Sequence record: NC_049849.1
Direction: 5' to 3' (one strand)
Length of the DNA stretch: 64,000 nt
Positions 1 to 52,955 of this stretch are shown piece after piece (the first letter of the stretch is position 1; each line of letters begins with the position of its first letter). Both the position numbers and the translations under genes were made by a program. The notes under the pieces were generated by a model. The model saw only the letters and a program-made list of their open reading frames with translations, searched no databases and was not told where the DNA came from.

Positions 1-1
1 G

Positions 2-30630: not shown

Positions 30631-30635
30631 ACAAA

Positions 30636-38405: not shown

Positions 38406-38408
38406 ATA
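38401..38408 (+). promoter_or_regulatory. TCGTAAATA motif
   Basis: Overlaps the helicase stop, 4 nt before ATG 38413. Confidence 0.5.
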
Positions 38409-38412
38409 ACAC

Positions 38413-38828: not shown

Positions 38829-38829
38829 T

Positions 38830-39429: not shown

Positions 39430-39755
39430 TGTACCCACCCGCAATGTATGACTCGTTTCTCAAACGCATCTGGCTTGGCATCGCCGACAAGGAGCATTAC
39501 GACGAGTCGATGATCCCGAATCTGCAAGAGTATCTCGAAGCCAAGCTGCAAGAGGCACTCGACTGGGAGTACTCGTACATCAAAGACTTCTACGTGAAGT
39601 GCGAAATCAAAACTGCGCTGTACGTCACCATCGGCCTGCAGTTCTATAAAGAAGCCCACATCACTTTCCTGGATGCCTCGGGGTACCGTGATCTTCAAAT
39701 GCTCCCCGCTAACTGTTCAATCACCCGTCAAGGAATGCAATGTCCGGCAACGTAA
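39429..39755 (+). CDS. hypothetical protein
   Basis: TAATG coupling. Confidence 0.65.
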   Translation: MYPPAMYDSFLKRIWLGIADKEHYDESMIPNLQEYLEAKLQEALDWEYSYIKDFYVKCEIKTALYVTIGLQFYKEAHITFLDASGYRDLQMLPANCSITRQGMQCPAT

Positions 39756-40090
39756 ACCACATCATGCTGCTCAAGCTGGTTGAGCGCCTGATGAAACAAG
39801 ACCTCATCAACGCATACATGAATGCGTACACCAGCGGCAGCTACTCGCACGAAGGTGCAGTATCGAAAGCATGTGAAATTCTCACTGAGCTGGGAATCGA
39901 GTACACGGTAACGCTAGAGGCGAAGACGCTGCCGGTACCTGACTACAACCAAAACTCGTACCCAAAGTTCACCGAGCGCTTTGCACGGATCAGTGTAACC
40001 TTGGAAACGAAAACAACGCCCGGTATCGACATACAGACTCGCGAAACCTTCCACTGCTTGCTTGGATGCCCTGACAATGCTGACAGCTAA
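39740..40090 (+). CDS. hypothetical protein
   Basis: AAGGA RBS; 116 aa. Confidence 0.6.
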   Translation: MSGNVNHIMLLKLVERLMKQDLINAYMNAYTSGSYSHEGAVSKACEILTELGIEYTVTLEAKTLPVPDYNQNSYPKFTERFARISVTLETKTTPGIDIQTRETFHCLLGCPDNADS

Positions 40091-40349
40091 ACAAGCCGGC
40101 GACCTCTACGACGACAAGAACGACGACAAGCAGTTGTGGGATTCGGTCAATCATCATCTGGCATTGATTGAAGGCCAAATCCGTTCGGTCTGCAAGTTCC
40201 ATCATCAACTGCAGTACAACATGCCAGCCGACAACGAGACGAAGAAGCAACTGATCTTCGAACTCATCGAGCACGGCTACCTCGTCACCGAAGTGCCCGC
40301 TACCGTCCCTTCCCATTTTAGACTTCAAATCATCTGGCCCCGCACATGA
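40077..40349 (+). CDS. hypothetical protein (L...GY.V...I.W phage family)
   Basis: ELIEHGYLVTE...IIW, similar to the 41534-41848 product. Confidence 0.6.
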   Translation: MLTAKQAGDLYDDKNDDKQLWDSVNHHLALIEGQIRSVCKFHHQLQYNMPADNETKKQLIFELIEHGYLVTEVPATVPSHFRLQIIWPRT

Positions 40350-40783
40350 CCTACCTCGCAACTGAACTCGCTATCACCGCAGCCATTTCTGCTAATCTCG
40401 CAAACCGTGAACGACTGAAGGGTACAAGCTCGATCATGATGGATCAGTCCAGCCCAGCTACGCTGCGGGACTTCTACGTCGCAAGTATCAGTATCGGCCG
40501 TCGCGCAGGCACCACCAGCTGGGCAGTCAATCGCGTGAAGACTGGCACCGCTATCGCCATCGTGTCGAATCCCGGCCTGGCTGAAGTGTACAAAGAGCAG
40601 GGCGCCAAGGAAGTCTACTCCGATCACTTTGTGCGTCAAGGCGGATTGTCCGGCAAGCAACTGCCTGAGTACATCATTCTCGATCCGGCCTCCTACTGGC
40701 CCACTCAGTCGCTGACCGAGCTGTACTCGGCCCTTGCCCCTCTGGTCCTCGGCACCGACCGCGTCATCGTCAATCTGAGCTGA
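40346..40783 (+). CDS. minimal degenerate P-loop ATPase, terminase-ATPase-like
   Basis: ISIGRRAGTT (Walker A-like, K>T), LSG...YIILDPAS (Walker B-like, E>P), final strand RVIVNLS. Confidence 0.5.
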   Translation: MTYLATELAITAAISANLANRERLKGTSSIMMDQSSPATLRDFYVASISIGRRAGTTSWAVNRVKTGTAIAIVSNPGLAEVYKEQGAKEVYSDHFVRQGGLSGKQLPEYIILDPASYWPTQSLTELYSALAPLVLGTDRVIVNLS

Positions 40784-40785
40784 AC

Positions 40786-40965
40786 ATGGAATACAAGATC
40801 GTTACCTCGCACACGCAGCAAGGCCTGGAGACTCAGGTCACGAATTTGATGCGCACTGGCTGGGAGCCGAAGGGCGGCTTCGCCATGATATCGACAGGCA
40901 CCTCCGTGTACTGGGGTCAAGCAATGGTGAGATATGAGTCACGTTCCACTGCAGTCTACGATTGA
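40786..40965 (+). CDS. DUF1737-like small protein (not in the ORF track)
   Basis: Own translation: MEYKIVTSHTQQGLETQVTNLMRTGWEPKGG...YWGQAMVR, 59 aa. Confidence 0.65.
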   Translation: MEYKIVTSHTQQGLETQVTNLMRTGWEPKGGFAMISTGTSVYWGQAMVRYESRSTAVYD

Positions 40966-41254
40966 TTGGACGAAGATTCCGCAGGCAACCATAGACTCGT
41001 ACATCGACGCGTTCATGGATGACACGCAGAACACCTTCTGGCGCAAGCTTGTGCATGATCGGCCATCTGCTCCTTGGCATGAGCGCGAGACACGACGCCT
41101 GCAACGAACCATCGTACCCTACGTCGATAATTCCACCGCCTCTGTTCACCTACAGGAAATGAGAGAAGCACATGAGCGCCGAGCTGAAAAGCTTGCAAGT
41201 CAGGTTGCACGAGAAAACCAAAGAGCTGCAGGCCCTCGAGCGAAACATCGCTGA
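40934..41254 (+). CDS. hypothetical protein
   Basis: 106-aa ORF that overlaps both neighbours; the 3' end is uncertain. Confidence 0.45.
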   Translation: MSHVPLQSTIDWTKIPQATIDSYIDAFMDDTQNTFWRKLVHDRPSAPWHERETRRLQRTIVPYVDNSTASVHLQEMREAHERRAEKLASQVARENQRAAGPRAKHR

Positions 41255-41537
41255 GTACAACTCGAAGCGTGGCAAGATATTCAAGGACATTGCGCAGCTG
41301 CAATTCCAGATTCAAGACCTGACCAAGAAAGACCTCGTGGTATCGGAGCATGCTGTACTTCGATATCTCGAGCGTATGTATAAGTTCGACCTCAACGAAA
41401 TCAAGAGTCAAATCCTGACACCGCAACTCATCAAGACCGCAGACACTCTAGGCAACGGCAAGTTCCCAACCGGTGCAGGCTTCAAGGCGGTAGTGCGTGA
41501 TCGCGTCATCGTTTCAATCATTGGAGATTCAGAGTGA
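41172..41537 (+). CDS. coiled-coil plus DUF4258/RelE-like domain protein
   Basis: VSEHAVLRYLER...KAVVRDRVIVSII. Confidence 0.6.
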   Translation: MSAELKSLQVRLHEKTKELQALERNIAEYNSKRGKIFKDIAQLQFQIQDLTKKDLVVSEHAVLRYLERMYKFDLNEIKSQILTPQLIKTADTLGNGKFPTGAGFKAVVRDRVIVSIIGDSE

Positions 41538-41848
41538 ATTCCGTACTCAGTCAAGTTGACTGCAACCTACCCACCGCGGAAGAGTCGCGCTTCGTATCGA
41601 AGAATCAAACGCCGTGGCCTGACGTGCCCATTTACGGCCCTGACGCAGACACGCTGCGCGCACTGTTCCTGATTATCAACGCAGGTCTGGTCCACGCTCG
41701 GAACAAAACCTACACCGGAGTTTCAAAAGACCTGATGCCTCCATACATGCAGCAGTGGTGGCCCAAGATTATTGAGCATCTGCAAAGCAAGGGCTACACC
41801 GTGACCGAGGAGCGCGATGTGGTTTTCATCGACTGGGCAACGGCATGA
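41534..41848 (+). CDS. hypothetical protein (LPTA...L..KGY.V...I.W family)
   Basis: GTGA overlap; HLQSKGYTVT...FIDW. Confidence 0.65.
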   Translation: MNSVLSQVDCNLPTAEESRFVSKNQTPWPDVPIYGPDADTLRALFLIINAGLVHARNKTYTGVSKDLMPPYMQQWWPKIIEHLQSKGYTVTEERDVVFIDWATA

Positions 41849-42072
41849 AAGTCCGGCATCTGAAGCCGTCCAGTATGTACCGGTCGTATGCCCGCAGTCT
41901 TACACGTCACGGCTGGACGCATGACACCAGCATCACTCGACTGTCGGACCAGGCTATGGAACACTTGCATGCCATGAATGATATTCTCCGCACCGTCGGT
42001 GAATCTCCGACGTTCACGTTTGAGAACTCGTTCCGCATGTTGCAGACTTCGCTTGGAGCAGAGAATGGATGA
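41845..42072 (+). CDS. hypothetical protein
   Basis: ATGA overlap; 75 aa. Confidence 0.55.
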   Translation: MKVRHLKPSSMYRSYARSLTRHGWTHDTSITRLSDQAMEHLHAMNDILRTVGESPTFTFENSFRMLQTSLGAENG

Positions 42073-42613
42073 CATAACAAAGTACATGAGCCAAGAGTTC
42101 AGCCACGGCATGAACCGTACGCAGTTGTTGTGCCATGGCCTGGATTTGATTGCGAAGTTCCCAGTCGGTGTCTCGCAAGTGCTGGCAGAACTGCAGAGCA
42201 GGGATGCAATCATTGCCGAGCAACAGCGCACGATTGACGCACTCAAGGCCAAGGTTTCAAGCAAGGAATGGGTGCTGCTCCCGCGCAATCCAACTCGCAT
42301 GATGACGCTGCGCGGCCTGCAAGGCGACAAGGTGTTCACCGACTCCAAGTTCGACTTGGCTCAAGACTACTTCGAGTTCTGCGACCTGCCGACCAAGTAT
42401 GAGAATGTGAAAGATCGCAGCGATATCATGTGTCACGATGACGACCGCGAGTACTATGTCATCAAGTCGATCTACCAAGGCTGCATTGAAGGCTTTGAGG
42501 AGCAACAACGTCGTAATGCAAACCCTGATCGTTCGGAGCGCGACAAGCAGGTTGATGCTCATTGGAGCGAGCATTGGCCCACGCCGGTAGAGCGCAATGA
42601 AGGCACCGAGTGA
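42065..42613 (+). CDS. hypothetical protein
   Basis: Likely start ATG 42065 with GGAG RBS; WVLLPRNPT..M motif. Confidence 0.65.
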   Translation: MDDITKYMSQEFSHGMNRTQLLCHGLDLIAKFPVGVSQVLAELQSRDAIIAEQQRTIDALKAKVSSKEWVLLPRNPTRMMTLRGLQGDKVFTDSKFDLAQDYFEFCDLPTKYENVKDRSDIMCHDDDREYYVIKSIYQGCIEGFEEQQRRNANPDRSERDKQVDAHWSEHWPTPVERNEGTE

Positions 42614-42932
42614 AACCAAAGCGAAGCCTTCGGTGCGTAGCTTCACTGTTCCGATCTATCGCTGCCGTGTCTACTACAGCGATAGCACCGAAGAGTCTGC
42701 GAAGCTGTGGCCGGAAGCTCGAGGCTATCTCGGCGTGTGTGGATCGACAGCCAAAGGTCTCTACATCGCAATACACGACCGCACGTTGAACACTCTGGTG
42801 CATGAGTGTGTGCATCTTTGTAATCACGTACTGGCGCGCGCAGGTGTTCCAATCAGTCAAGAGGCAGACGAAGCTGCCGCGTATCTAACCGAGTGGTTGT
42901 TCAAGCGACTACGAAAGGAGTTAAAGCTATGA
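42597..42932 (+). CDS. small HExxH zinc-metalloprotease-like protein
   Basis: TLVHECVHLCNHV...DEAAAYL. Confidence 0.65.
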   Translation: MKAPSETKAKPSVRSFTVPIYRCRVYYSDSTEESAKLWPEARGYLGVCGSTAKGLYIAIHDRTLNTLVHECVHLCNHVLARAGVPISQEADEAAAYLTEWLFKRLRKELKL

Positions 42933-43261
42933 CATTCAACCTGCAGCATTGGATGGACGATAAAGTCGAGTGGCATGACGGCATCAGCGACCGCGAAACC
43001 TCAAAGCTGTCCTACCTGTGCTTCCTGAACTATGCCAGCGGTGGCAGTGAAGACCCTGATGATTGGGGTCCGGTCAGAATGGAGCGCGGCCATCAACGCG
43101 GACTGACAAAGTGGCAGGGCGTACGCCTGCTGACCTACATCGGATATCTCGACGGCTTGGAAGATGCGGGAGTTAACGTGGACGCAGTATGGAATGAGGT
43201 GAAGGCTTACAGCGCACGTCAAGAGTGGGTAGAATCCCAAGATGGAGAATGCAATGTTTAA
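42929..43261 (+). CDS. hypothetical protein, paralog A
   Basis: ATG 42929 with AAGGAG RBS; FNLQHWMD...GHQRGL...GLEDAGVN. Confidence 0.7.
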   Translation: MTFNLQHWMDDKVEWHDGISDRETSKLSYLCFLNYASGGSEDPDDWGPVRMERGHQRGLTKWQGVRLLTYIGYLDGLEDAGVNVDAVWNEVKAYSARQEWVESQDGECNV

Positions 43262-43682
43262 TCTGCAGCAGTGGATGGACGAGACGGTATCGGTCTCGAC
43301 TTGGAACGGTACGGTACAGCAACGCCGCGCCGATTACTTGTACTTCCTGATCTACGCTAACGGCAGTGCAATCGTGCGTGGCTGGGGCTGCATCAGCAAT
43401 CGCAACGGCCATCAGTCGGGCCTTGAGCAGAACCAAGCACTGGCGCTCCTCGAGTACTCGGCGTTCCTATCTGGCCTCGAATGCGCGGGCGTCAACACCG
43501 CAGCCTTCTGGCACGGCATGAACGAATACGCCAAGCGCTTTGATGGTGAACTCGTGATCGAGCCACCCTCCGATGATCGCATTGAGCAAGCTGCTCAAGA
43601 CTTGGAAGCTCGACTGATGACGGACATTGCCAAGGAGGTAGCCGGACCCTCTGATTTTGAAAAGGACTTCTTGAAGCCATGA
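43254..43682 (+). CDS. hypothetical protein, paralog B
   Basis: ATG 43254 with GGAG RBS; FNLQQWMD...GHQSGL...GLECAGVN. Confidence 0.7.
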   Translation: MFNLQQWMDETVSVSTWNGTVQQRRADYLYFLIYANGSAIVRGWGCISNRNGHQSGLEQNQALALLEYSAFLSGLECAGVNTAAFWHGMNEYAKRFDGELVIEPPSDDRIEQAAQDLEARLMTDIAKEVAGPSDFEKDFLKP

Positions 43683-44053
43683 ATCACATACACTTCCAAT
43701 CTTTTGGCAAGCCGCATTTCCTTCGACCGCTGGGCAATACCGTAGAGCTCTCCACCAAATGGAGCGGCCTATCAATCAAGTATCAAGACTTATGCGAGCA
43801 AGTGATCGGCTCCGATGTATGGTTCGACAGTATGATCCTGAAGGTTCGCGGCATACTGTGCATCGCTTCGCCTGCTGCAATCATTGAACCCGGGCGCGCT
43901 CTATCTATCATCGTGTCTCGTGGTGAGTGGCTGATGGAAGTCTATGAGACTACGATCCGCGCACATGAAAACCTTGGCGCTTCGTCAGAGGAATTGAATG
44001 CGGCTCGCAAGAATCTGCTGAACTACATCAACGCACTGGAGCAACCTCAATGA
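43679..44053 (+). CDS. hypothetical protein
   Basis: ATGA overlap. Confidence 0.65.
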   Translation: MNHIHFQSFGKPHFLRPLGNTVELSTKWSGLSIKYQDLCEQVIGSDVWFDSMILKVRGILCIASPAAIIEPGRALSIIVSRGEWLMEVYETTIRAHENLGASSEELNAARKNLLNYINALEQPQ

Positions 44054-44583
44054 TTACCGAAGGACCCTTACGTTGCTACGGTGAAGACGTAGAAGCGTGG
44101 CACGCTGCGTTCAAAGCTGCATACCTGCAATACTGCCAGAACGACTGGTACAGCAGTACGACGTTGGACCCCAAAGACTGGTCGAACAGAGCAGGCTTCA
44201 TGGTGGAGCGCATCATGAACCTCACGACCTACGGCAGTGGTGACGAAGACATTGCCCGGAAGATGATTGAAGTGCTCGACCACCTGTGGATGAAAACGCC
44301 CGGCAGTCGACTGTGCGAGACGACCGACTACATCTTGATGTGCAACGTGCCGTGGCTCTACCGCTTCCTCGAGTGGGGTACGTCGATCCGTGGCGCCTGG
44401 CTGCAACTCAACCCGCCGAAGCCCGCAGTCGACAATAAACGCCAGAGCAATCCCTACGTTGTGTTCAACACTGGTGAGAGCTTCAGCGAGCAGGACGGTC
44501 AGTACGACCTGCTGGTACACACCACAGAAGAACTCATCGCCGCCATCAAAGGGATGCTGCGATTTATGACGGAGCCGCAATGA
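44050..44583 (+). CDS. hypothetical protein
   Basis: ATGA overlap. Confidence 0.7.
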   Translation: MITEGPLRCYGEDVEAWHAAFKAAYLQYCQNDWYSSTTLDPKDWSNRAGFMVERIMNLTTYGSGDEDIARKMIEVLDHLWMKTPGSRLCETTDYILMCNVPWLYRFLEWGTSIRGAWLQLNPPKPAVDNKRQSNPYVVFNTGESFSEQDGQYDLLVHTTEELIAAIKGMLRFMTEPQ

Positions 44584-44915
44584 ACGACAACACCGCACAT
44601 CAGCTACTCCGAAATCAAATCACGCTGGAAGTTCTGAACGTATGGCGTAAGTACATGGTGCCTACGCTTGTCGGCGAACCCAGTGATGCTATATCCCGGC
44701 AGTTGGTCTATGACGCTTGGCATTCTTTACTGCCTGCGATGTTGCCGCCGCACGTCAAGTTTGAAGTCATATGCGATGAGTCGAACAATCCAACGTCAGT
44801 CATTGCAGTCAACGACATTTGCGTACACTTGGCGTTCATGGTAACGCCAAATGACGTGTTCGCAATGGACCTCAGCTTGCAGAAGACACTCATCGAAAAC
44901 GGAATGAACCAATGA
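44580..44915 (+). CDS. stand-alone tail-sheath C-terminal-domain-like protein
   Basis: LVGEPSDAISRQLV...FEVICDESNNPTSVIAVNDICVHL matches the sheath C-terminal FEPND..TR / F.V.CD..NN.P..I pattern. Confidence 0.7.
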   Translation: MNDNTAHQLLRNQITLEVLNVWRKYMVPTLVGEPSDAISRQLVYDAWHSLLPAMLPPHVKFEVICDESNNPTSVIAVNDICVHLAFMVTPNDVFAMDLSLQKTLIENGMNQ

Positions 44916-45175
44916 CAATCGACACTAAACGAATCCTCGAAATCGCGGCCAATCCCAACACCTGCCCGATTAGTCCGTTCTGGTTGAACGACGAAGTCCG
45001 CATTACTGACGTACGCATCGCCACTATTGCATTCGCCAGGGCTATCGAAGCAGAGGTCAGAGCGAACATGCTGAAGACGATGAACGCCACAGCAAAGTTA
45101 ACTAGCGCGCTGCGGGAGCAACGCCTAGAAGAAAGCCTGCAGGCTGAGCGCGATGGACACCAATCAAAGACCTGA
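44912..45175 (+). CDS. hypothetical protein
   Basis: ATGA overlap; IAFARAIEAEV motif. Confidence 0.6.
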   Translation: MTIDTKRILEIAANPNTCPISPFWLNDEVRITDVRIATIAFARAIEAEVRANMLKTMNATAKLTSALREQRLEESLQAERDGHQSKT

Positions 45176-45338
45176 CAGTCCATGCGTCGGAGTCTGCTCA
45201 ACTCTCTACACTGAAATCTGCAATGGTTGCGGTCGTACCTACATGGAAGCAGCCAACTGGGTGTTCATGGATGAGGAAGAAAAAGACAAGGTATGGATTC
45301 GCATTACTGCCGAGGGATTCCCTAAGCGGAAAATTTAA
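45153..45338 (+). CDS. DUF1289 family Cys-rich protein
   Basis: PDSPCVGVCST...ICNGCGRT..EAANW.FMDEEEK..VW.RI. Confidence 0.85.
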   Translation: MDTNQRPDSPCVGVCSTLYTEICNGCGRTYMEAANWVFMDEEEKDKVWIRITAEGFPKRKI

Positions 45339-45340
45339 TA
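45332..45340 (+). promoter_or_regulatory. AATTT(A/C)ATA motif
   Basis: Overlaps the DUF1289 stop; upstream of 45397. Confidence 0.45.
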
Positions 45341-45345
45341 CCAAT

Positions 45346-45380
45346 GGGAAGTCCTAGAGATAGGGCTTCCCTATTCTCGT
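45346..45380 (+). terminator. hairpin with GAGA tetraloop, probable terminator
   Basis: GGGAAGTCCTA-GAGA-TAGGGCTTCCC followed by a T-rich tract. Confidence 0.65.
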
Positions 45381-45396
45381 TTCTAGGAGTTCCACA

Positions 45397-45624
45397 ATGC
45401 TTGTCGCTTCAATTCATTTGAACATCACCGGTACGGTGTACTCGGTCTTCACCACTGAGGATGGCGCGACCACGACTACGGTCTTGTCAGACGAGGATCA
45501 CTTTGTAGAATGGGTGGCGCTGGTCGTGCCGTTCCTGAATCGTTGGTCCGGCGCTCAGTACACTTGTACGGCTACGATGATCGATCAAGAGAACTACAAG
45601 ATCGAAGTCGATGATGGTACGTGA
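45397..45624 (+). CDS. hypothetical protein
   Basis: AGGAG RBS; 75 aa. Confidence 0.65.
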   Translation: MLVASIHLNITGTVYSVFTTEDGATTTTVLSDEDHFVEWVALVVPFLNRWSGAQYTCTATMIDQENYKIEVDDGT

Positions 45625-45628
45625 AAAT

Positions 45629-45636
45629 CGTAAATA
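45629..45636 (+). promoter_or_regulatory. TCGTAAATA motif
   Basis: Intergenic, before 45645. Confidence 0.5.
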
Positions 45637-45644
45637 GAGATTGA

Positions 45645-46157
45645 ATGCGTCATGCAGACTTGCAGGCGCCAACGTTGTTCAAATCAACAGTACAACAAAT
45701 GAAAACACTGACTCGTCCCTACCACGTTGTAGATCAGCTCAAGACGCTTCAAGAGTGTGGTGAGTATCTGCTGGCCATGAGCGAGCACAACGACCTTGAC
45801 GCTATGGAACGCGCACTCGGCGATGTGTACAGCGTCATCAAGCGCTTGCGCGAAGGCCCGACCAACGCGCTGGAGTTTCAAAAAGAATCGGGCAACGATC
45901 TGACGTGGACAGCATGCACTGCATTCGGCGATCACACCAACGTTGAAGTCGTGCCGATCTACATGGGTCCCGGTGCAGGCTACGTGCTGGCGCATCCGCA
46001 ACGCCTGCGCTATGCTGACACCAAGCAGCTGGTCTATCACAACCGTGAGCGTCTCCGCAGGTATTTCCTGTACACGCCACCGTCTATGTTCCAGTCGCTG
46101 ACCAACACCACTACCAGCACTTCCATCTTCAAAGGACCAGGAGGTCCCAATGTTTAA
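45645..46157 (+). CDS. hypothetical protein
   Basis: 170-aa ORF; start could be later. Confidence 0.6.
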   Translation: MRHADLQAPTLFKSTVQQMKTLTRPYHVVDQLKTLQECGEYLLAMSEHNDLDAMERALGDVYSVIKRLREGPTNALEFQKESGNDLTWTACTAFGDHTNVEVVPIYMGPGAGYVLAHPQRLRYADTKQLVYHNRERLRRYFLYTPPSMFQSLTNTTTSTSIFKGPGGPNV

Positions 46158-46527
46158 CCCGATCGAAGAAGCAGTCGAGAAGCTCAACGCTGCGAGCGGC
46201 TTAGCTGAAACCAAATTCCACAATCTGTCGGAGAACGAGACTTACGAGGAACGTTATCTCTGGAATCACAGCATTGGCGAACTTGTGCGAGAGCTCAGTG
46301 TGCCGCCGACCAAAGACCAAGTGTCTGACCGTGCCGAAATCAACGATGCGCTATGGCAGGAGTTTAAAGCCACCGACTTGTGCAAGCATTTGTTGGCTGT
46401 GACCGAGCGCGCCTTTAAGTACGAAGGCTTCAAAGAAAACCCGCCCGAGCGATACAAGCCTCAAGCGCTGGCTGAGGTCATGGGCTACTATATCAGGGAA
46501 CTCAAAAATGCCACAAGCATCAGCTGA
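46150..46527 (+). CDS. hypothetical protein
   Basis: AGGAGG RBS. Confidence 0.7.
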   Translation: MFNPIEEAVEKLNAASGLAETKFHNLSENETYEERYLWNHSIGELVRELSVPPTKDQVSDRAEINDALWQEFKATDLCKHLLAVTERAFKYEGFKENPPERYKPQALAEVMGYYIRELKNATSIS

Positions 46528-46714
46528 ACTCGCCGCGAAGTTCAAGGACGACGGCGACGCATTCGAAGTCTTGGCCGACCGTTTCCATGTTGGCACCAAT
46601 GGGTACATTCAACCGAAGCAAGGCACTGAAGTCACCGATGACGATATGGATGCCATCGAGTATCTCGTTGACGAGTGGGACTACGGCTATGACAACACCC
46701 CGCTCGTATCATGA
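46508..46714 (+). CDS. hypothetical protein
   Basis: MPQAS...AIEYLVDEWDYGY, a recurrent phage family pattern. Confidence 0.65.
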   Translation: MPQASAELAAKFKDDGDAFEVLADRFHVGTNGYIQPKQGTEVTDDDMDAIEYLVDEWDYGYDNTPLVS

Positions 46715-46937
46715 TCTATTCATCACCACGCCGGACATTGAGCGCACGTCTATTTCGGATTTGCCGTTTCCGTTGATGGTGACTTGCTCACGCCTTGGTG
46801 GCTGGGAACTATGGAGTGGCTGCAGTGCTGACTCCAAACTCCTGGCCGGCGAGTATCACTCGAAGGGAATCAAGCTCGAATGTCAGGGCGTGGTTCTCGT
46901 AAATACATTGGAGAAGCCTGAATGCGCATCGCAGTAA
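46689..46937 (+). CDS. hypothetical protein (uncertain)
   Basis: Only ORF that fills the gap; weak RBS. Confidence 0.3.
   Translation: MTTPRSYHDLFITTPDIERTSISDLPFPLMVTCSRLGGWELWSGCSADSKLLAGEYHSKGIKLECQGVVLVNTLEKPECASQ
46898..46905 (+). promoter_or_regulatory. TCGTAAATA motif
   Basis: 16 nt before ATG 46922. Confidence 0.5.
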
Positions 46938-47206
46938 CGCCGATCGCTCTTGCCCTTGCGGGCTGTCATCAGCCGATACCACAAGACGAAACCAAAGCAG
47001 GCTCGTACACTGTACAAGACTTGTTCACCGACAAGGATGGTTGCACGGTTCGCCGCTACTCAATGGATACAAGCCCAGGCATGTCCAACTGGCGCCACTA
47101 CGTTGTGTGCCCGAAGCATGACTCGGTGACGATTACGCAGCATACCGACCAGACTGGTAAGTCCACTACGACCTCGACCACTTCCATCCCGACGGTGACC
47201 AAATGA
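46922..47206 (+). CDS. small lipoprotein
   Basis: IALALAGC lipobox; LFTDKDGCTVRR...HYVVC. Confidence 0.7.
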   Translation: MRIAVTPIALALAGCHQPIPQDETKAGSYTVQDLFTDKDGCTVRRYSMDTSPGMSNWRHYVVCPKHDSVTITQHTDQTGKSTTTSTTSIPTVTK

Positions 47207-47622
47207 CGCTACAAGGGGCCTCAATGGTAGTGCTACTGCTCTGTGCACTGCAAGTTAAACACTTCTTCGTTGACTTCGTGTTTCAGACAGACACGATGGT
47301 CCGCGAAAAGGGAATCTACGGAGCACCGGGCGGCCTCGTTCATTCGCTGCAGCACGCAGTGGCGACCGGCTTGATCGTACCCTACTTCCTAGTCGGTCCT
47401 GAGGTGTGGCGCGTCGTGACCATGACTCTGTTCATCGTGGTCTTGGAGTTCATGTGGCATTATCACACGGACTTCTACAAGATGTGGCATGGCAAGAAGC
47501 ACGGCTTGAATCCGAGCCATAAGGCGTTTTGGGTTTCGCTCGGCTTGGATCAACTCAGTCATCAACTCAACTACGTGGTGATCATATGGCTTGTACTTGC
47601 GTTCAACGCATTGCTGAACTAG
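47203..47622 (+). CDS. DUF3307 membrane protein
   Basis: KHFFVDFVFQT..M...KG.YG..GG..HS..H...HY.TD...GLDQL.H. Confidence 0.85.
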   Translation: MTLQGASMVVLLLCALQVKHFFVDFVFQTDTMVREKGIYGAPGGLVHSLQHAVATGLIVPYFLVGPEVWRVVTMTLFIVVLEFMWHYHTDFYKMWHGKKHGLNPSHKAFWVSLGLDQLSHQLNYVVIIWLVLAFNALLN

Positions 47623-47753
47623 ATAGTCAGCTCAAGACCCTTCAGCGTGAGCTTCAGGCGCTGAAGGATCAAATGCGACTGGTCATTCATCATAACGAAG
47701 GGACGCCAAGCGCACCCGTCATGTACAACCCGAACTCGAAGCTTGGTCAATGA
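47586..47753 (+). CDS. hypothetical coiled-coil protein (uncertain)
   Basis: Fills the gap; heptad pattern. Confidence 0.35.
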   Translation: MACTCVQRIAELDSQLKTLQRELQALKDQMRLVIHHNEGTPSAPVMYNPNSKLGQ

Positions 47754-48130
47754 AAGAACGCTCAGTCTTATTTATCGGCGGCCCGAAGCATGGGCGCGTC
47801 ATTTGGATGAATCAGGACCTACACGAGTTCCGCATGGAGCTCTGCCACGCAATGACTTCGATCAACGAGGGCTTTTATGCACCTGTGAAGTCGGCAACGA
47901 CCGTGATTCAATATCGCGACTCCGGCTTTCGTAGTTCCGAAGGTCACAAAATCTATACGCAAGACCTACCGGTAATCAAGATCGACGGTCGAGCTTTGCA
48001 GTTGGCAGGCGACGTTACCGAAGTACAGATTCACTTGCAGTACCTAGAGCAGCAGCTCGAAGCAACGCGTAAAGAGCGCGACCACTACAAACAGAAGTTC
48101 CAGGCAATCAAGGAAATCGCAAATGAGTAG
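47750..48130 (+). CDS. hypothetical protein
   Basis: LFIGGPKHG N-motif; C-terminal coiled coil. Confidence 0.7.
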   Translation: MKERSVLFIGGPKHGRVIWMNQDLHEFRMELCHAMTSINEGFYAPVKSATTVIQYRDSGFRSSEGHKIYTQDLPVIKIDGRALQLAGDVTEVQIHLQYLEQQLEATRKERDHYKQKFQAIKEIANE

Positions 48131-48470
48131 AAAAGTTAAAGCCCCTTCGCAGAACCTCAAGTCCGCCATGACCGCGCTGGCTAACAGTGCCGGTAGCCTG
48201 CGTCATGATAGCGAGCAGCCGAAGGGACTGACCCCGCAAGGTCTGATTGCGGAGCTCAACGGCCAGCTCGACTCGGTCTTTGCTCATCTGAGTTCGCTCC
48301 GCAGCAAGCTGCATCCTGTGATTCAGGTCAGCGCAGAGGAAGCCGGTGGCCAAATTGGCTATGCCAGCCCGACCAACGCGCCGTTGTCTATCGAACTGAA
48401 CGATCTGCGCAATCGCATGACTTCTCTTATCAACAGCATCACTTCCCTGACCGACGAGGTAGACCTGTAA
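48123..48470 (+). CDS. hypothetical helical protein, paralog A
   Basis: LNGQLD...LSIELNDL..R...TDEVDL. Confidence 0.7.
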   Translation: MSRKVKAPSQNLKSAMTALANSAGSLRHDSEQPKGLTPQGLIAELNGQLDSVFAHLSSLRSKLHPVIQVSAEEAGGQIGYASPTNAPLSIELNDLRNRMTSLINSITSLTDEVDL

Positions 48471-48829
48471 TGGCAACGCCCAACAAAGCACGCAAGATCA
48501 AAACCGCATCTGCACGTTCGCGCTCGGACGAACTCAACTATGATCCCGCTCCTATGGACCTGGCTGAGGGTGAGTCCCCGATGGGTGAGATCGAAGACCT
48601 GACCAATCAGCTCGACTACGCACTGATTACGCTTTCTCTTTCTGTGGAAGCCATGGAAAAGAGACTCCAGTTGGTGTTGACTCACCGAGTCGATGCGACG
48701 GACAAGACTGACCCGGAACTCCGGCGTTCCTACGACTCGCGTCTTGCAATCAGCCTAGACGCACTGCTTGCTCGTGTACAGCATGTGAACGATCACGTTC
48801 GCCGTATCACCGATGACGTGCGCCTCTAA
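48470..48829 (+). CDS. hypothetical helical protein, paralog B
   Basis: LTNQLD...LAISLDAL..R...TDDVRL. Confidence 0.7.
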   Translation: MATPNKARKIKTASARSRSDELNYDPAPMDLAEGESPMGEIEDLTNQLDYALITLSLSVEAMEKRLQLVLTHRVDATDKTDPELRRSYDSRLAISLDALLARVQHVNDHVRRITDDVRL

Positions 48830-49178
48830 CCCTCCTGAATGGGTTAAGCTCGGTCCGCTGTGGATTCTGTCCGGGATGGCTACCATTGCTCAGACCGGAC
48901 ATTGCGAGTATGACGTTTCGTGCATCAAGACTTCCATGCACGAATGCTATCTCGCTACGGCTTATAAGCTGCTGGACTTGTTCGAGGAATCGAATGAGCC
49001 GGCAGCTGTTGCCGTATTCAAATCCTTTGCCATGCAAGTTATACCTGCGTTGCAAGCACACGCCGGACCGCGCATCGACCTACAGGTCACCGAAGAATAT
49101 GGAACCGTCGTAGTCAACAACGGCAAGGAAGTCCAGCGTCACGTTCAGACTACGGTACGTCTCACGCGCAAAATTTAA
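48813..49178 (+). CDS. hypothetical protein
   Basis: 121-aa ORF in operon. Confidence 0.55.
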   Translation: MTCASNPPEWVKLGPLWILSGMATIAQTGHCEYDVSCIKTSMHECYLATAYKLLDLFEESNEPAAVAVFKSFAMQVIPALQAHAGPRIDLQVTEEYGTVVVNNGKEVQRHVQTTVRLTRKI

Positions 49179-49180
49179 TA
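49172..49180 (+). promoter_or_regulatory. AATTT(A/C)ATA motif
   Basis: Followed by AGGAG RBS and ATG 49200. Confidence 0.5.
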
Positions 49181-49199
49181 GTTTGCATAGGAGCACACA

Positions 49200-49571
49200 A
49201 TGGCAACATATGATTTTCGCAGTAACAAAGTTGGGGACCTCAAGATCGGCATCATGCTCGAATGGGAAACCCAGCGCATCGTCGTTGCCAGTACCTTGAA
49301 CGTGAATACGCAAGAGCGAATTCTGATTGTGAAGGCAGCCAAGCCCGAGGACCGCGAAGACGTACAGCGCTTCATCAACGCGGCCTCTGGCGAGTTCACG
49401 GTCAAGAACAATCAGAAGTTCCTAGACACTCTTGCTGCGTACGTGGACGCCAAGTACACCGTGAAGTCGAAGAAGAACTCTATAGAATTCGACAGCGCAT
49501 CGAAGGCTCAAGCCTTCGCCAAAGCTAACGGTGCGACAATCACCAAGATCGTGGTAAAGGCAAATGGCTGA
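49200..49571 (+). CDS. hypothetical basic protein (possibly late/virion)
   Basis: Strong RBS; preceded by the late-type motif. Confidence 0.75.
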   Translation: MATYDFRSNKVGDLKIGIMLEWETQRIVVASTLNVNTQERILIVKAAKPEDREDVQRFINAASGEFTVKNNQKFLDTLAAYVDAKYTVKSKKNSIEFDSASKAQAFAKANGATITKIVVKANG

Positions 49572-50430
49572 CCATGTAATGATCTTCGACGGCAACTGGT
49601 ATCTGCATCGCGCATATTCCATTGCCGGAGAAGCTTCGCCGAAGGAAGGCGTGGCTCGGCTGTTCCTATCGTTGATTGCGCGGGACGCGTTGATGAATCG
49701 CTGCAACAAGATCGCTGTAGCCTTCGACGGCGACAACGTATTCCGCTATGCGATCTACCCCGAGTACAAAGCTAACCGCGACAAGAAAAAGAAAGAGTCG
49801 AAGAAGGACGGCAAGCAGAAGTCGACCGATGGCATCTACACCATCAGCTTGCCGTTCCTGCAATCGGTGTTGACCACGCTAGAGATTCCCTGGGTGCAGC
49901 CGCCGAAGCATGAAGCCGACGACGTGCTGGCCTCTACTGCTGTGTTCTATCACAGTCAGGGCATACAGGTTACGCTTGGTGCGAAGGACAAAGACATTCA
50001 CCAGGTGCTGCGCAAAGGCATCCGGCTGTATATCTCTGACGCGAAGCCTGAACCGAAGCTGGTCAAGCATACGACGCCGAACAAGAAATTCCAAGTGCCG
50101 TATCGAAAGATGCCGCTGTATCAAACGCTGGTCGGTGATGCAATCGACAACATCAAAGGCGTGTTTGGTCCGGCTAAGGCCAAGGCGCTGGCCTTGAAGT
50201 ACAAGTCTTTGAAAGAGATTGTGGCAGGTGAGCCAGACCTCAAGAAAACGTTGATCGTAAATATGGAGAGACTGAAGCTCAACAAGCGATTGGTGACACT
50301 CATACGTGACCAACCGTGCGAAGCTGCGAAGCTTCCGAAGAATGCGCATCGCCGCATCGCCTTCAGTCCGCAATCTCTGATCGACTATTGCCAGTACCTC
50401 TATCCAAAACAGAAAGGACTATTCGGATGA
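49564..50430 (+). CDS. 5'-3' exonuclease / flap endonuclease (PolI N-terminal, T4 RNase H-like)
   Basis: IFDGNWYLHRAY, VAFDG, RYAIYPEYKANR, EADDVLAS, DKDIHQ, LVGDAIDNIKG. Confidence 0.92.
   Translation: MADHVMIFDGNWYLHRAYSIAGEASPKEGVARLFLSLIARDALMNRCNKIAVAFDGDNVFRYAIYPEYKANRDKKKKESKKDGKQKSTDGIYTISLPFLQSVLTTLEIPWVQPPKHEADDVLASTAVFYHSQGIQVTLGAKDKDIHQVLRKGIRLYISDAKPEPKLVKHTTPNKKFQVPYRKMPLYQTLVGDAIDNIKGVFGPAKAKALALKYKSLKEIVAGEPDLKKTLIVNMERLKLNKRLVTLIRDQPCEAAKLPKNAHRRIAFSPQSLIDYCQYLYPKQKGLFG
50256..50263 (+). promoter_or_regulatory. TCGTAAATA motif (intragenic)
   Basis: Inside the exonuclease 3' end, upstream of 50427. Confidence 0.35.
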
Positions 50431-50681
50431 CCACGCAAACCGTTATGATCTACGACCAGTTCGGCGTAGAGCCTTTGCAGTTCTTGGTGCTGAACGGCGA
50501 CTACACGCATCTTGACCAGGTCTTCATCAACTCAACCGAATGCACTGATGAGCAAATGGATGAGTTGTCGTCGCTGATCTACGATGGCGACGGCAACGTC
50601 ATTGCCAAGTTCAAGAAGAAGTTCCCACGCAAGGCAGTGGTCAACGGCGCCAAGGTTATTGTTGCTGGCTTCTTGCCATGA
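50427..50681 (+). CDS. hypothetical protein
   Basis: ATGA overlap; ends VIVAGFLP. Confidence 0.7.
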   Translation: MTTQTVMIYDQFGVEPLQFLVLNGDYTHLDQVFINSTECTDEQMDELSSLIYDGDGNVIAKFKKKFPRKAVVNGAKVIVAGFLP

Positions 50682-50947
50682 GGACCAACAGCGCAGTAAC
50701 TTCGGTCGAGTACAACATTCGACCCAGCGATGATCCCTTTACGCTGTACCTTTTGTATATGACCATTCGGCACGGGCCCGAAGAGCTTGTGTTTGAAATC
50801 CGAGTTGGCCATCACTGGATGCCGGCTGACGTTGATGCAGCCATCAATCGCAACATCGCCACGTACTTTTCAGCCATCATGTATCATGCCGATATCCGAT
50901 CCTGGATCAAGGAACAGCACCTGAAGCAACAGGACGAGCAATGCTGA
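50678..50947 (+). CDS. hypothetical protein
   Basis: ATGA overlap. Confidence 0.6.
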   Translation: MRTNSAVTSVEYNIRPSDDPFTLYLLYMTIRHGPEELVFEIRVGHHWMPADVDAAINRNIATYFSAIMYHADIRSWIKEQHLKQQDEQC

Positions 50948-51024
50948 AGAAAATTTTGAATGCCGCGCTGATCGTTATCGTTTGCGCGCTTGCTTTCTAC
51001 TACGGATGGAACTTCCATGCTTGA
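50941..51024 (+). CDS. 27-aa membrane peptide (not in the ORF track)
   Basis: MLKKILNAALIVIVCALAFYYGWNFHA*; fills the gap. Confidence 0.4.
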   Translation: MLKKILNAALIVIVCALAFYYGWNFHA

Positions 51025-51421
51025 CAGCTATAACTACCGTACGACTCAAAACACCAGCGTCAACGTTCAAGTCGAGCAAGCCAACGTGCATGACGCTGCA
51101 CGTCTCTATGGCGAAGTAGAGGAAAAAGTACGTAAGTCTTTCTTGGGTACGCTCAAAGCCGAGGGCCTTGCAATGTCGCTGTACGTCTCGGTCTTCTTTG
51201 ATGTGTCTGCTGACAGCATGTACGCGGTATTCGGTACGGTCGAAGTCAACGGTAGGCGCATCTATGCGAAGGTGCCGGTCAAACAATTCGACAACATACA
51301 AGACGTGGTACTGCGCTTGCGCGATGAAGTCGCCACGCAAATCGCAAACCAACTGATGGGGCAGATTCCTAACTCTGTCGGTGTAGAGGTTCATCGAATT
51401 CTGGAGCAACATAGAAAATGA
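51017..51421 (+). CDS. hypothetical protein
   Basis: Likely start ATG 51017. Confidence 0.65.
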   Translation: MLDSYNYRTTQNTSVNVQVEQANVHDAARLYGEVEEKVRKSFLGTLKAEGLAMSLYVSVFFDVSADSMYAVFGTVEVNGRRIYAKVPVKQFDNIQDVVLRLRDEVATQIANQLMGQIPNSVGVEVHRILEQHRK

Positions 51422-51648
51422 CTGAAATCAAAATCAATGCAAGCATAGAACGTCTCAAGCGCATCATCGACTGTGAGCCGGAGATTCGTCGCCGTCTCAT
51501 CGCAAGTGAGAAAGACAACGCAGCTTGCAGTGGTGTACCCTACACGGAACCCGAAGCTCTGAGCCTCGAGTACGTCGTAGACTTCCTGCTGTCGATCGGT
51601 ATCTCGCAAATCGAGTATGCCGGACTTCAGCGTCAACTGGGCAAGTAA
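51418..51648 (+). CDS. hypothetical protein
   Basis: ATGA overlap. Confidence 0.6.
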   Translation: MTEIKINASIERLKRIIDCEPEIRRRLIASEKDNAACSGVPYTEPEALSLEYVVDFLLSIGISQIEYAGLQRQLGK

Positions 51649-52032
51649 ATGGAAAAACACACTCCTGAAACCCTTCAACGTTTGATCGACATTTCGGCTA
51701 AGTTTGAAGACCTCGGCCTCATCACTCTGACTCCGAGTGAGTTCGCTCGCATTCGCGGCCAGGTCTCGGCTGATAGATTCCGAGTACCCTACGTGCTGGC
51801 TGGTGCGGCTTTCATGAACGTAATGGTCAATGATCCTGACTGGCACTCGCTCGTCGATCCGACCACGCGCCATGAGTTCCTGATGCAAGGCCACATCTGC
51901 AACTGCTTCGGCACTTCGATCTACTCGGATGCTTATTGCCTTGAGCGCCAAGTAGCGGACAATGCCCTCTTTCTGTTCTCCGAGCGCGATGGCAATCTCG
52001 TTGCTCACAAAGTAACTTTCGTCGTAGAGTAA
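51649..52032 (+). CDS. stand-alone major-capsid-protein A-domain-like protein
   Basis: LTP..FA....V......P.VL...DPTTRHEFLMQG.....G..I.SDAY matches my recollection of the axial domain of jumbo-phage HK97-fold capsid proteins. Confidence 0.6.
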   Translation: MEKHTPETLQRLIDISAKFEDLGLITLTPSEFARIRGQVSADRFRVPYVLAGAAFMNVMVNDPDWHSLVDPTTRHEFLMQGHICNCFGTSIYSDAYCLERQVADNALFLFSERDGNLVAHKVTFVVE

Positions 52033-52035
52033 CAC

Positions 52036-52839: not shown

Positions 52840-52955
52840 CAAAGAACAAAACCCTACTCTTCCTACTCGGCTTGAGCGTGGCCGTTGCGGCCGCGACCAA
52901 CTCGCCACCCGTCGTGGCACTGTATTTGCAAATCGCAATGACAGGAGCACTCTGA
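52836..52955 (+). CDS. 39-aa hydrophobic peptide (not in the ORF track)
   Basis: MTKNKTLLFLLGLSVAVAAA...; ATGA overlap with phoH. Confidence 0.35.
   Translation: MTKNKTLLFLLGLSVAVAAATNSPPVVALYLQIAMTGAL

What the first reader, a model, noticed from the sequence alone, without database searches (positions are those of the whole stretch)
40346..52032. Candidate decoy suite: three isolated fragments of virion-assembly proteins in the non-structural arm
Seen: three small complete ORFs (111-145 aa) among early/middle hypothetical genes, far from the morphogenesis operon. They resemble single domains of the terminase ATPase (40346-40783), the tail sheath (44580-44915) and the major capsid protein (51649-52032). 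Established: several bacterial defence sensors detect these protein classes (Avs STAND NTPases bind terminase and portal; CapRel binds capsid protein; DSR2 binds tail tube). Inference: the phage may make non-assembling mimics before the real structural proteins, to occupy sensors without triggering them. An alternative is that they are assembly regulators or chaperones. I know of no description of such a suite, but cannot check the literature here.
Basis: partly seen in the sequence, partly recalled or inferred. Interest (0 to 1): 0.82.

Follow-up and report, generated by a model that had tools for sequence, protein, structure and literature searches.

The report
Stand-alone capsid and sheath domain genes
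Two of the three small genes really are very diverged, stand-alone copies of one domain of this jumbo phage's own capsid and tail-sheath proteins (a fourth, portal-derived one lies outside the window), the "terminase" one is not, and nothing yet shows whether they are decoys, assembly modulators or leftovers.

Summary
The window is the last 64 kb of Achromobacter phage Motura (221 kb, phiRSL1-like jumbo myophage). All three ORFs exist and are annotated as hypothetical proteins.

- **ORF3 (51649-52032):** a genuine, highly diverged copy of about residues 215-332 of the phage's 361-residue major capsid protein (BLASTP E=6e-14; Motura-free profile E=4e-13; hhalign 97%).
- **ORF2 (44580-44915):** a stand-alone tail-sheath C-terminal domain, matching sheath residues 499-641 of 652. 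It is the only other ORF in the genome hit by a Motura-free sheath profile (E=4e-4 to 2e-3; hhalign 81% against at most 0.9% for 41 control genes). Its model resembles T4 gp25, the sheath initiator.
- **ORF1 (40346-40783):** shows no terminase similarity in any test.
- **Fourth case:** a genome-wide scan found a portal-derived small ORF outside the window.

All are intact, codon-adapted singletons with no orthologue in any relative or metagenome searched, so conservation and selection cannot be measured.

The decoy idea is neither supported nor refuted. I favour, weakly, interface-only paralogues that bind their parent proteins. Interest is moderate.

The parts
51649..52032 (+). ORF3 (127 aa; QDH83390.1, which GenBank starts at 51682): a stand-alone, very diverged copy of part of the HK97-fold major capsid protein
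   Evidence: It is 30-32.5% identical to all five clade MCPs and has genome-typical codon usage (LLR 0.39 per codon).
51706..52029 (+). Capsid-homologous block of ORF3 (residues about 20-127, matching MCP residues about 215-332 of 361). By its position in the fold this is mainly the A (axial) domain plus the following strands; that domain assignment is an inference.
   Evidence: alignment; 19 of 39 MCP-invariant columns kept. (profile positions 189-267 of 318 and 149-232 of 280).
44580..44915 (+). ORF2 (111 aa; QDH83656.1): a stand-alone tail-sheath C-terminal domain. It matches sheath residues 499-641 of 652 with one internal deletion of about 35 residues, and lacks the sheath's last 11 residues and everything N-terminal of residue 499.
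   Evidence: AF2 model: pLDDT 65. Foldseek: T4 gp25 sheath initiator, probability 0.97, TM 0.54-0.59. A GGAG ribosome-binding site lies 5 nt upstream.
44670..44834 (+). Best-conserved core of ORF2 (residues 31-85), carrying the sheath C-terminal-domain hallmark motifs (ND-FTR-like and VxCDxxNN)
40346..40783 (+). ORF1 (145 aa; QDH83721.1): an intact, codon-adapted orphan gene that is not detectably related to the terminase. It is listed because the finding includes it, but it is not part of the fragment set.
   Evidence: Its only hit, phrog_2586 (unknown function, E=1e-3), lies within the PHROG noise range shown.
36489..53158 (+). Co-directional array of about 45 tightly packed small genes, mostly orphans, that holds all three ORFs. 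It is followed by replication genes (exonucleases, PhoH-like ATPase, clamp-loader subunit).
   Evidence: Only PhoH is conserved in distant relatives.
1..667 (+). 3' end of the portal gene (record 156254-158098). This is the parent of the fourth, portal-derived small ORF, which lies outside the window at record 14732-15301.

Best explanation
Shown: ORF3, ORF2 and a fourth ORF outside the window (record 14732-15301) are real, intact genes. Each encodes only one interaction module of a virion protein of the same phage.
- ORF3 matches capsid protein residues about 215-332.
- ORF2 matches the sheath C-terminal domain.
- The fourth ORF carries a portal segment, present twice.

ORF1 is an unrelated orphan. 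All are extremely diverged from their parents (18-32% identity, as far from Motura's own proteins as from those of distant phages), lineage-specific, and embedded in accessory gene arrays.

Inferred (my preferred mechanism, low confidence): they are exapted 'interface-only' paralogues that still bind the partner surfaces of their parent proteins.

For ORF2 the logic is concrete. In contractile tails, the sheath C-terminal domain of one ring is the platform onto which the N- and C-terminal 'handshake' strands of the next ring dock. The gp25-type initiator is a small protein with that same platform fold. ORF2 keeps the platform but lacks the sheath's N-terminal part and its last 11 residues. It could therefore accept strands but not donate them, acting as a cap or holdase for sheath subunits.

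By analogy, ORF3 and the portal-derived protein would bind unassembled capsid or portal subunits. That would delay or regulate polymerisation, either of the phage's own proteins or of a co-infecting relative's.
For: Homology:
- ORF3.
- ORF2.
- Portal-derived ORF.

Real genes rather than chance ORFs:
- In-frame codon-usage LLR is 0.15-0.53 per codon, against 0 or below for overlapping antisense ORFs.
- Starts overlap or abut the upstream stops.
- Alignments over more than 100 codons at about 20-30% identity contain only in-frame indels.
- ORF3 keeps 49% of MCP-invariant columns against 24% of variable ones.
- ORF2 keeps 11 of 17 highly conserved sheath columns.

Fold:
- The ORF2 model has pLDDT 65 and agrees with the BFVD model of the same protein (TM 0.78).
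- Its best meaningful PDB match is the T4 gp25 sheath polymerization initiator.

Role of the sheath C-terminal domain as handshake platform, and structural equivalence of the initiator: PMC10457771.

An unbiased genome-wide scan recovered fragments only of virion polymer proteins, none of replication proteins.
Against: - No binding, expression or virion data exist.
- All four genes are singletons, so purifying selection cannot be measured.
- The ORF2 model comes from a single sequence and is only moderately confident, and the gp25 match has a Foldseek E-value of 0.087.
- A phiRSL1-clade-only sheath profile (4 sequences) does not detect ORF2 (E=9.3).
- The 49% versus 24% contrast for ORF3 is partly expected even under neutrality.
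- Recognisable fragments can only come from slowly evolving proteins, so the enrichment for structural proteins may be a detection bias.
- A free interface fragment could poison the phage's own assembly.
Confidence: 0.35

Rival explanations
1. Relics. The fragments are leftovers of old partial duplications or illegitimate recombination involving conserved structural genes. They are carried along in a roomy jumbo genome with little or no function of their own.
For: - They are strictly lineage-specific. Only Motura has a second MCP-like place among 98 records, and the other 29 IMG/VR loci carrying the portal motif are full-length portals.
- No small homologue exists among 5.8 billion proteins.
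- Each covers an arbitrary-looking part of its parent, and ORF2 carries an internal deletion of about 35 residues.
- The surrounding arm is hypervariable.
Against: - At 18-32% identity, neutral decay should have produced frameshifts and stops, yet all four are intact with only in-frame indels.
- They keep genome-typical codon usage.
- They retain family-invariant residues preferentially.
- They are packed without spacers between neighbouring genes.
- No closer 'donor' gene that would allow a recent capture was found in IMG/VR or in 185,579 genomes, although those searches need exact 8-residue matches.
Confidence: 0.27
2. Decoy suite. The fragments are made before the virion proteins and occupy host sensors of capsid, portal or sheath without activating them.
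For: - MCP and portal are direct triggers of Avs and CapRel-type sensors (PMC13728456).
- A phage protein that counteracts a tail-tube-sensing system exists: DSAD1 against DSR2 (PMC11087589, abstract seen).
- The genes lie in accessory arms, where anti-defence genes are typically found (general knowledge).
- An independent scan added a portal-derived member.
Against: - ORF1 is not terminase-like.
- The sheath is not a known trigger.
- Avs sensors are reported to envelop the whole target core and to be activated by binding. A one-third capsid fragment would either not bind or would risk triggering.
- No conservation in any relative.
- No precedent was found in the literature searched.
- Timing is unknown.
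Confidence: 0.12
3. ORF2 is an ordinary virion or assembly component, such as a second gp25-like sheath initiator or a tail-completion factor, that is merely encoded away from the tail module.
For: Foldseek gives T4 gp25 (probability 0.97) and 'baseplate assembly protein W' (probability 0.8). Its size (111 aa) is typical of initiators.
Against: - No GPW_gp25 Pfam match.
- Its sequence motifs are those of the sheath C-terminal domain itself.
- It lies in the small-gene arm, not the baseplate block.
- It is absent from all relatives that share the tail genes.
- It has no similarity to the 111-aa ORF at 8412-8747 next to the baseplate genes.
Confidence: 0.1
4. The resemblances of ORF2 and ORF3 are chance, or result from convergence of short motifs.
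For: - PHROG hits in the E=1e-3 to 1e-2 range are common among unrelated small genes of this arm: about 10 among 39 genes.
- ORF2 is at the noise floor in plain BLAST scans.
Against: - ORF3 scores E=4e-13 with a profile that excludes Motura.
- ORF2 is the only non-sheath ORF out of 1769 above noise with three different sheath profiles.
- ORF2 is a clear outlier against 41 control genes in hhalign.
- The matches are in register across PHROG, BLASTP and custom profiles.
Confidence: 0.04

Closest known systems
gp25 / TssE-type sheath polymerization initiators (T4 gp25, PDB 5iw9; XM1 gp15)
   Same: A small stand-alone protein of about 110-130 aa whose fold matches the sheath C-terminal domain. It offers the beta-sheet platform that accepts the handshake strands of sheath subunits.
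   Different: - ORF2 carries the sequence hallmarks of the sheath domain itself, not of the GPW_gp25 family.
- It sits outside the baseplate module.
- It is not conserved among relatives with the same tail.
Full-length tail sheath proteins (T4 gp18 type; Pfam Phage_sheath_1 and Phage_sheath_1C; phrog_23)
   Same: ORF2 is homologous to the C-terminal domain, matching Motura sheath residues 499-641. Motura's sheath aligns with T4 gp18 residues 335-654.
   Different: ORF2 lacks the other domains and both terminal strands, and carries an internal deletion of about 35 residues. It is only 18-24% identical to any sheath.
Capsid-protein paralogues within one genome (for example the T4 vertex protein gp24 relative to gp23; from general knowledge)
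   Same: A second gene in the same genome descended from the HK97-fold major capsid protein.
   Different: Those paralogues are full-length, sit in the head module and are virion components. ORF3 is about a third of the fold, in an accessory arm, and unique to one phage.
Satellite-encoded capsid homologues and other assembly-redirecting proteins (PICI Ccm, P4 Sid; from general knowledge)
   Same: Proteins that act by engaging capsid-protein interfaces to alter assembly. This is the type of mechanism I favour.
   Different: They are encoded by satellites rather than by the phage itself. They are full-length or unrelated folds, and have experimentally shown effects.
DSAD1, the phage inhibitor of the tail-tube sensor DSR2 (PMC11087589)
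   Same: A phage protein that blocks a sensor of a structural protein.
   Different: To my knowledge DSAD1 is not derived from the trigger protein. No structural-protein-derived decoy was found in the literature searched.

Membership tests
HK97-fold major capsid protein (phrog_2522 / NCBIfam NF042927) - ORF3 | Significant sequence or profile similarity to the family | tested here: met
   E=6e-14, E=4e-13 and 97% probability. The match covers only ORF3 residues about 20-127.
HK97-fold major capsid protein - ORF3 | Complete fold (N-arm, E-loop, P-domain with spine helix, A-domain) in a protein of about 280-400 aa | tested here: not met
   ORF3 is 127 aa and matches only MCP residues about 215-332 of 361. 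Flanking ORFs show no MCP similarity.
HK97-fold major capsid protein - ORF3 | Encoded in the head module beside the protease and scaffold genes; conserved in relatives | tested here: not met
   ORF3 lies next to the PhoH and exonuclease genes. It is unique to Motura among 98 records with this MCP family.
Tail sheath (Pfam Phage_sheath_1 and Phage_sheath_1C; phrog_23) - ORF2 | Similarity to the sheath C-terminal domain | tested here: met
   profile E=4e-4 to 2e-3, hhalign 81%, and 11 of 17 conserved columns kept. Pfam's own model gave no hit.
Tail sheath - ORF2 | N-terminal and middle domains plus the terminal handshake strands needed to polymerise | tested here: not met
   ORF2 spans only sheath residues 499-641 of 652. 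The last 11 residues and everything before residue 499 are absent.
gp25-like sheath initiator (Pfam GPW_gp25) - ORF2 | gp25-like fold | tested here: inconclusive
   Foldseek hit to 5iw9_B: probability 0.97, TM 0.54-0.59, E=0.087. The query was a single-sequence model with pLDDT 65.
gp25-like sheath initiator - ORF2 | Sequence match to GPW_gp25 and location in the baseplate gene block | tested here: not met
   No Pfam hit. ORF2 is at 44.6 kb, in the small-gene arm; the baseplate genes are at about 8.7-17.7 kb.
Terminase large subunit ATPase domain - ORF1 | Profile or sequence similarity to TerL ATPase domains | tested here: not met
   E=7-9 with an unfiltered clade profile; hhalign 2.8%.
Terminase large subunit ATPase domain - ORF1 | Walker A motif with the catalytic lysine (GxxxxGK[ST]) | tested here: not met
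   The only P-loop-like stretch in ORF1 has no lysine at that position (translation; aligned to the TerL Walker A region at E=0.74).
Portal protein (phrog_16240) - fourth ORF, record 14732-15301 | Similarity to the family / full-length portal of about 500-650 aa | tested here: inconclusive
   The segment similarity is met (E=1.3e-10; 64% identity over 36 aa). The full-length criterion is not met: the ORF is 189 aa and holds two copies of one portal segment.
Phage anti-defence decoy or sensor inhibitor | Binds a host sensor and blocks its activation | not testable with these tools
   There are no PADLOC hits, but that is a library of defence proteins, not anti-defence proteins. No binding or phenotype data exist.

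The most novel reading that the evidence does not exclude
Motura has repeatedly turned single interface modules of its own virion polymers (capsid A-domain region, portal segment, sheath handshake platform) into separate small genes. These act as molecular mimics, either occupying host sensors of conserved virion proteins or capping the assembly of competing contractile or capsid structures. That would be a previously undescribed class of 'self-derived' mimic proteins.
Probability: 0.12. Interest if true: 0.85.

Novelty: new variant of a known kind. Interest (0 to 1): 0.5.

Why it matters
Conserved virion proteins are now known to be the main protein patterns that bacterial immune sensors recognise. 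Virion polymers also assemble through a few modular interfaces.

A phage that keeps intact, separately encoded copies of just those modules, from three different virion proteins, offers a natural test case for how new small phage genes arise from pieces of old ones. If they prove functional, they would also show how interface mimicry is used in assembly control or in conflict.

If they are relics, they set a useful baseline. Recognisable fragments of structural genes can persist as intact ORFs in jumbo-phage accessory regions, and should not be over-interpreted.

Tried and rejected
- **ORF1 as a terminase fragment: rejected.** Every sequence and profile test was negative. Its two database 'hits' were repeat proteins matched several times over short stretches. 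The single-sequence AlphaFold model was unusable (pLDDT 33), so it was not fold-searched.
- **ORF3 as the surviving piece of a decayed full-length capsid gene: rejected.** Flanking ORFs and other frames show no MCP similarity.
- **QDH83593.1 (the gene next to the tube gene) as the sheath: wrong.** The true sheath is QDH83596.1.
- **ORF2 as a paralogue of the 111-aa ORF beside the baseplate genes:** no similarity.
- **Homing-endonuclease or other mobile-element context for the fragments:** neighbouring ORFs have no Pfam domains.
- **Search for orthologues through synteny** (PhoH, exonuclease and thymidylate synthase neighbours; viral and metagenome collections): only distant relatives without the fragments were found.
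- **Search for close 'donor' genes:** none found.
- **Promoter and terminator scan:** at chance level overall.
- **PHROG hits alone are unreliable at E=1e-3 to 1e-2**.

Full report
**Identity of the window**

The 12.5 kb around the finding is 100% identical to Achromobacter phage Motura (MN094788.1 / NC_049849.1, 221,431 bp, genus Moturavirus). Window position equals record position minus 157,431, so the window is the last 64 kb of the record.

Motura belongs to the phiRSL1-like jumbo myophages. Window 1-36 kb carries the end of the portal gene, baseplate, tail-fibre and lysis genes. From 36.5 to 53 kb runs a co-directional array of about 45 tightly packed small genes, nearly all annotated as hypothetical. 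Replication genes follow.

The parent structural genes lie elsewhere in the genome:
- TerL at record 30079-32145.
- MCP at record 120209-121294.
- Portal at record 156254-158098.
- Sheath at record 116647-118605. GenBank calls it 'tail connector protein', but it matches Pfam Phage_sheath_1 and Phage_sheath_1C and phrog_23 at E=5e-72, and RefSeq calls it tail sheath.

**The observation**

The three ORFs exist exactly as described and are annotated CDSs. Generic libraries gave only weak signals:
- ORF1: phrog_2586, unknown function, E=1e-3.
- ORF2: two tail-sheath PHROGs, E=7e-3 and 0.17.
- ORF3: a major-head PHROG at E=2.7e-3 and an HK97 capsid NCBIfam model at E=2.6e-3.

A control scan of the other 39 small genes of the arm showed that about 10 of them also give PHROG hits between E=4e-4 and 8e-3, to assorted families. 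Such hits prove nothing on their own. I therefore tested each claim directly against the phage's own proteins and against purpose-built profiles.

**ORF3 is capsid-derived**

- BLASTP against Motura's MCP gives 31% identity over 70 residues, E=6e-14.
- The MCP as a tblastn query finds ORF3 in the six-frame window at E=3e-10.
- In an unbiased scan of all ORFs of 60-199 aa against all ORFs of 250 aa or more, the pair scores E=9e-12.
- A profile built from the MCPs of phiRSL1, BcepSauron, BCSR5 and PhiXhv-12, with Motura excluded, was searched without filters against all 1769 six-frame ORFs of the genome. It returns the MCP and then ORF3 at E=4e-13; the next ORF scores 0.19.
- hhalign gives 97% probability, against 2.3% or less for the other small genes.

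The alignment places ORF3 residues about 20-127 on MCP residues about 215-332 of 361. Only in-frame gaps occur, and 19 of the 39 columns invariant among the five MCPs are kept. From the order of elements in the HK97 fold, this is mainly the A-domain region; that assignment is an inference. The family has a solved relative, 6wkk_A.

ORF3 is 30-32.5% identical to every MCP of the clade, Motura's included. Those MCPs are 48-82% identical to each other. The flanking ORFs have no MCP similarity, so ORF3 is not one piece of a broken full-length copy.

**ORF2 is a stand-alone sheath C-terminal domain**

- Against the true sheath, BLASTP gives pairwise E=2e-4 (ORF2 30-75 on sheath 561-608) with a shared VICD-SNNP motif. 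In genome-wide BLAST this sits at the noise floor.
- Profiles of sheath C-terminal domains settle it. With Motura excluded, ORF2 is the only ORF after the real sheath above noise, at E=2.3e-3. With six T4-like sheaths only, E=4.4e-4. With all sequences, E=5.9e-4. Noise starts at E of about 1 or above.
- A profile of only the four phiRSL1-clade sheaths misses it (E=9.3). This is a caveat, and a sign that ORF2 is not a recent copy of the resident sheath.
- hhalign gives 81% and E=1e-5, against at most 0.9% for 41 control genes.
- Added to the sheath alignment, ORF2 aligns along its whole length to Motura sheath residues 499-641 of 652, with one deletion of about 35 residues. It keeps 11 of the 17 columns that are at least 10/12 identical. 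It is 18-24% identical to every sheath, about as far as Motura's sheath is from T4-type sheaths.
- Motura's sheath aligns to T4 gp18 residues 335-654.
- A single-sequence AlphaFold model of ORF2 is moderately confident (pLDDT 65, pTM 0.55): two helices followed by a three-stranded sheet. It agrees with the BFVD model of the same protein (TM 0.78). Its best meaningful PDB match is T4 gp25, the sheath polymerization initiator (probability 0.97, TM 0.54-0.59, E=0.087). BFVD also returns several unnamed phage proteins of about 100 aa, a 'baseplate assembly protein W' and a DUF7355 protein of a Yersinia phage.

**ORF1 is not terminase-like**

- No family library gives a terminase hit.
- BLASTP to Motura's TerL gives E of 0.26 or worse. 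The P-loop-like stretch aligns to the TerL Walker A region only at E=0.74 and lacks the lysine.
- An unfiltered profile of TerL ATPase domains from six relatives ranks ORF1 12th to 20th, at E=7-9. hhalign gives 2.8%.
- Exhaustive phmmer against 1.84 billion representatives finds only the protein itself and two repeat proteins matched repeatedly over short stretches.
- The structure prediction failed (pLDDT 33).

ORF1 is an intact, codon-adapted orphan gene of unknown nature.

**A fourth fragment**

The unbiased scan found that QDH83427.1 is portal-derived. This 189-aa protein is encoded at record 14732-15301, outside the window and just upstream of thymidylate synthase.
- Residues 140-175 match portal residues 278-313 at 64% identity, with pairwise E=3e-13 and E=2e-11 in the genome-wide scan.
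- Residues 16-105 match portal residues 234-325 at 28% identity. The same portal segment is therefore present twice.
- The portal PHROG phrog_16240 matches at E=1.3e-10 with two stretches.
- No fragment of any replication protein was found at comparable significance.

**Are they genes?**

- All four ORFs have in-frame codon usage typical of Motura genes. The LLR per codon is 0.45, 0.15, 0.39 and 0.53, against a median of 0.32 for the other small genes and 0 or below for the long antisense ORFs that overlap them.
- Their starts overlap or abut the preceding stops.
- ORF2 and the portal-derived ORF have good Shine-Dalgarno sites.
- At this level of divergence, neutral decay would be expected to have broken the frames. 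That is an inference, and it fails if the pieces were captured recently from a very divergent donor.
- No such donor was found in IMG/VR or in 185,579 prokaryotic genomes, but those searches need exact 8-residue matches.

**Distribution**

- None of the ORFs has a homologue among small proteins in 5.8 billion sequences or in GenBank phages.
- With the full MCP as query, only Motura has two places among 98 records.
- The portal motif occurs in 29 other IMG/VR loci, all of them full-length portals.
- BcepSauron, BcepSaruman and BCSR5 do show a second portal-like place each. I could not locate these.
- Syntenic loci from distant relatives share only PhoH with this arm.
- A closer relative exists in metagenome 3300017540 (sheath 85% identical, TerL 76%). 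Its contigs do not cover these regions.
- Conservation and dN/dS therefore cannot be assessed.

**Mechanism**

What is shown is homology, intactness and context. Everything else is inference.

In contractile tails, the sheath C-terminal domain of one ring is the platform on which the N- and C-terminal handshake strands of two subunits of the next ring dock. The baseplate's initiator protein superimposes on that domain and makes the same sheet augmentation (PMC10457771). ORF2 keeps the platform but lacks the sheath's N-terminal part and last 11 residues. It could accept strands without donating any, which is the logic of an initiator or cap.

I therefore favour, at low confidence (0.35), that these genes are interface-only paralogues that bind unassembled subunits of their parent proteins.

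The decoy reading (0.12) fits the fact that MCP and portal are sensor triggers. It is weakened by several points: the failure of ORF1; the sheath not being a known trigger; the reported whole-fold, activating mode of Avs recognition; and the lack of any conservation or precedent.

The relic reading (0.27) fits the singleton distribution but not the intact frames and codon adaptation.

The descriptive layer is more secure. My confidence that each is a true fragment paralogue is about 0.95 for ORF3, 0.8 for ORF2 and 0.95 for the portal-derived ORF.

Consensus lines printed by the alignment tool were not used.

Noticed in passing
Outside the window: MN094788.1 14732-15301 (L004:14732-15301:+): QDH83427.1 (189 aa, hypothetical, just upstream of thymidylate synthase) contains two copies of a segment of the phage's own portal protein. 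One copy is 64% identical to portal residues 278-313. The portal PHROG matches at E=1.3e-10.
   Followed up: yes
Outside the window: MN094788.1 116647-118605: The GenBank record names the tail sheath 'tail connector protein'. It matches Pfam Phage_sheath_1 and Phage_sheath_1C, phrog_23 (E=5e-72) and T4 gp18, and RefSeq calls it tail sheath.
   Followed up: yes
BcepSauron, BcepSaruman and BCSR5 records; L057-L059, L067, L076: With Motura's portal as query, these three Burkholderia phages each show two portal-like places. Several IMG/VR relatives have portal reading frames of only 499-519 aa instead of about 620. These could be split portals or further fragments.
   Followed up: no
window 45346-45511: The only real intergenic gap of the small-gene arm holds an 11-bp-stem terminator-like hairpin (45346-45371) and the best promoter-like site of the region (45484-45511, 10 of 12 matches). 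It may be a transcription-unit boundary between ORF2 and ORF3. Overall site counts are at chance level.
   Followed up: no
window 10799-11680: An ORF matching homing-endonuclease PHROGs (phrog_314, E=1e-27) sits inside the baseplate gene block.
   Followed up: no
window 38413-53000 (39 other small genes, alignment A3): One of these genes gives a weak 'tail protein' PHROG hit (phrog_446, E=2.9e-3). The gene at 38413-38640 weakly matches the Cor superinfection-exclusion family (E=1e-3 over 26 aa). Four others have solid hits to PHROGs of unknown function or 'membrane protein'. The member behind the tail-protein hit was not identified.
   Followed up: no
IMGVR_UViG_3300017540_000009 and _000016 (L007, L034, L048): A moderately close relative of Motura is present in metagenome 3300017540: sheath 85% identical, TerL C-terminus 76%, and the 60-aa portal segment 100%. 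Its contigs do not cover the fragment-bearing regions.
   Followed up: partly
window 18800-19150, 26700-27850, 33200-33750 (minus strand): Tail-fibre and minor-tail genes outside the window (record 149316-154468) have paralogous segments in three window genes, with up to 49-60% identity over 60-120 aa. Tail-fibre modules are therefore duplicated within the genome.
   Followed up: no
window 51391-52059 (-), 40325-40660 (-), 44068-44598 (-): Long antisense ORFs (111-222 aa) overlap the three genes but have no coding signal (codon LLR of 0 or below). They are shadow ORFs.
   Followed up: yes
window 51649 vs 51682: GenBank starts ORF3 at a TTG (51682) with no ribosome-binding site. The ATG at 51649 directly follows the upstream stop codon. 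The capsid-homologous block begins after both candidate starts.
   Followed up: partly
window 1604-2701: The annotated 'baseplate protein' has a weak tail-tube-like region (BLASTP E=0.004 to the tube protein over about 170 aa). That would be expected for a tube-initiator or hub-type protein.
   Followed up: no
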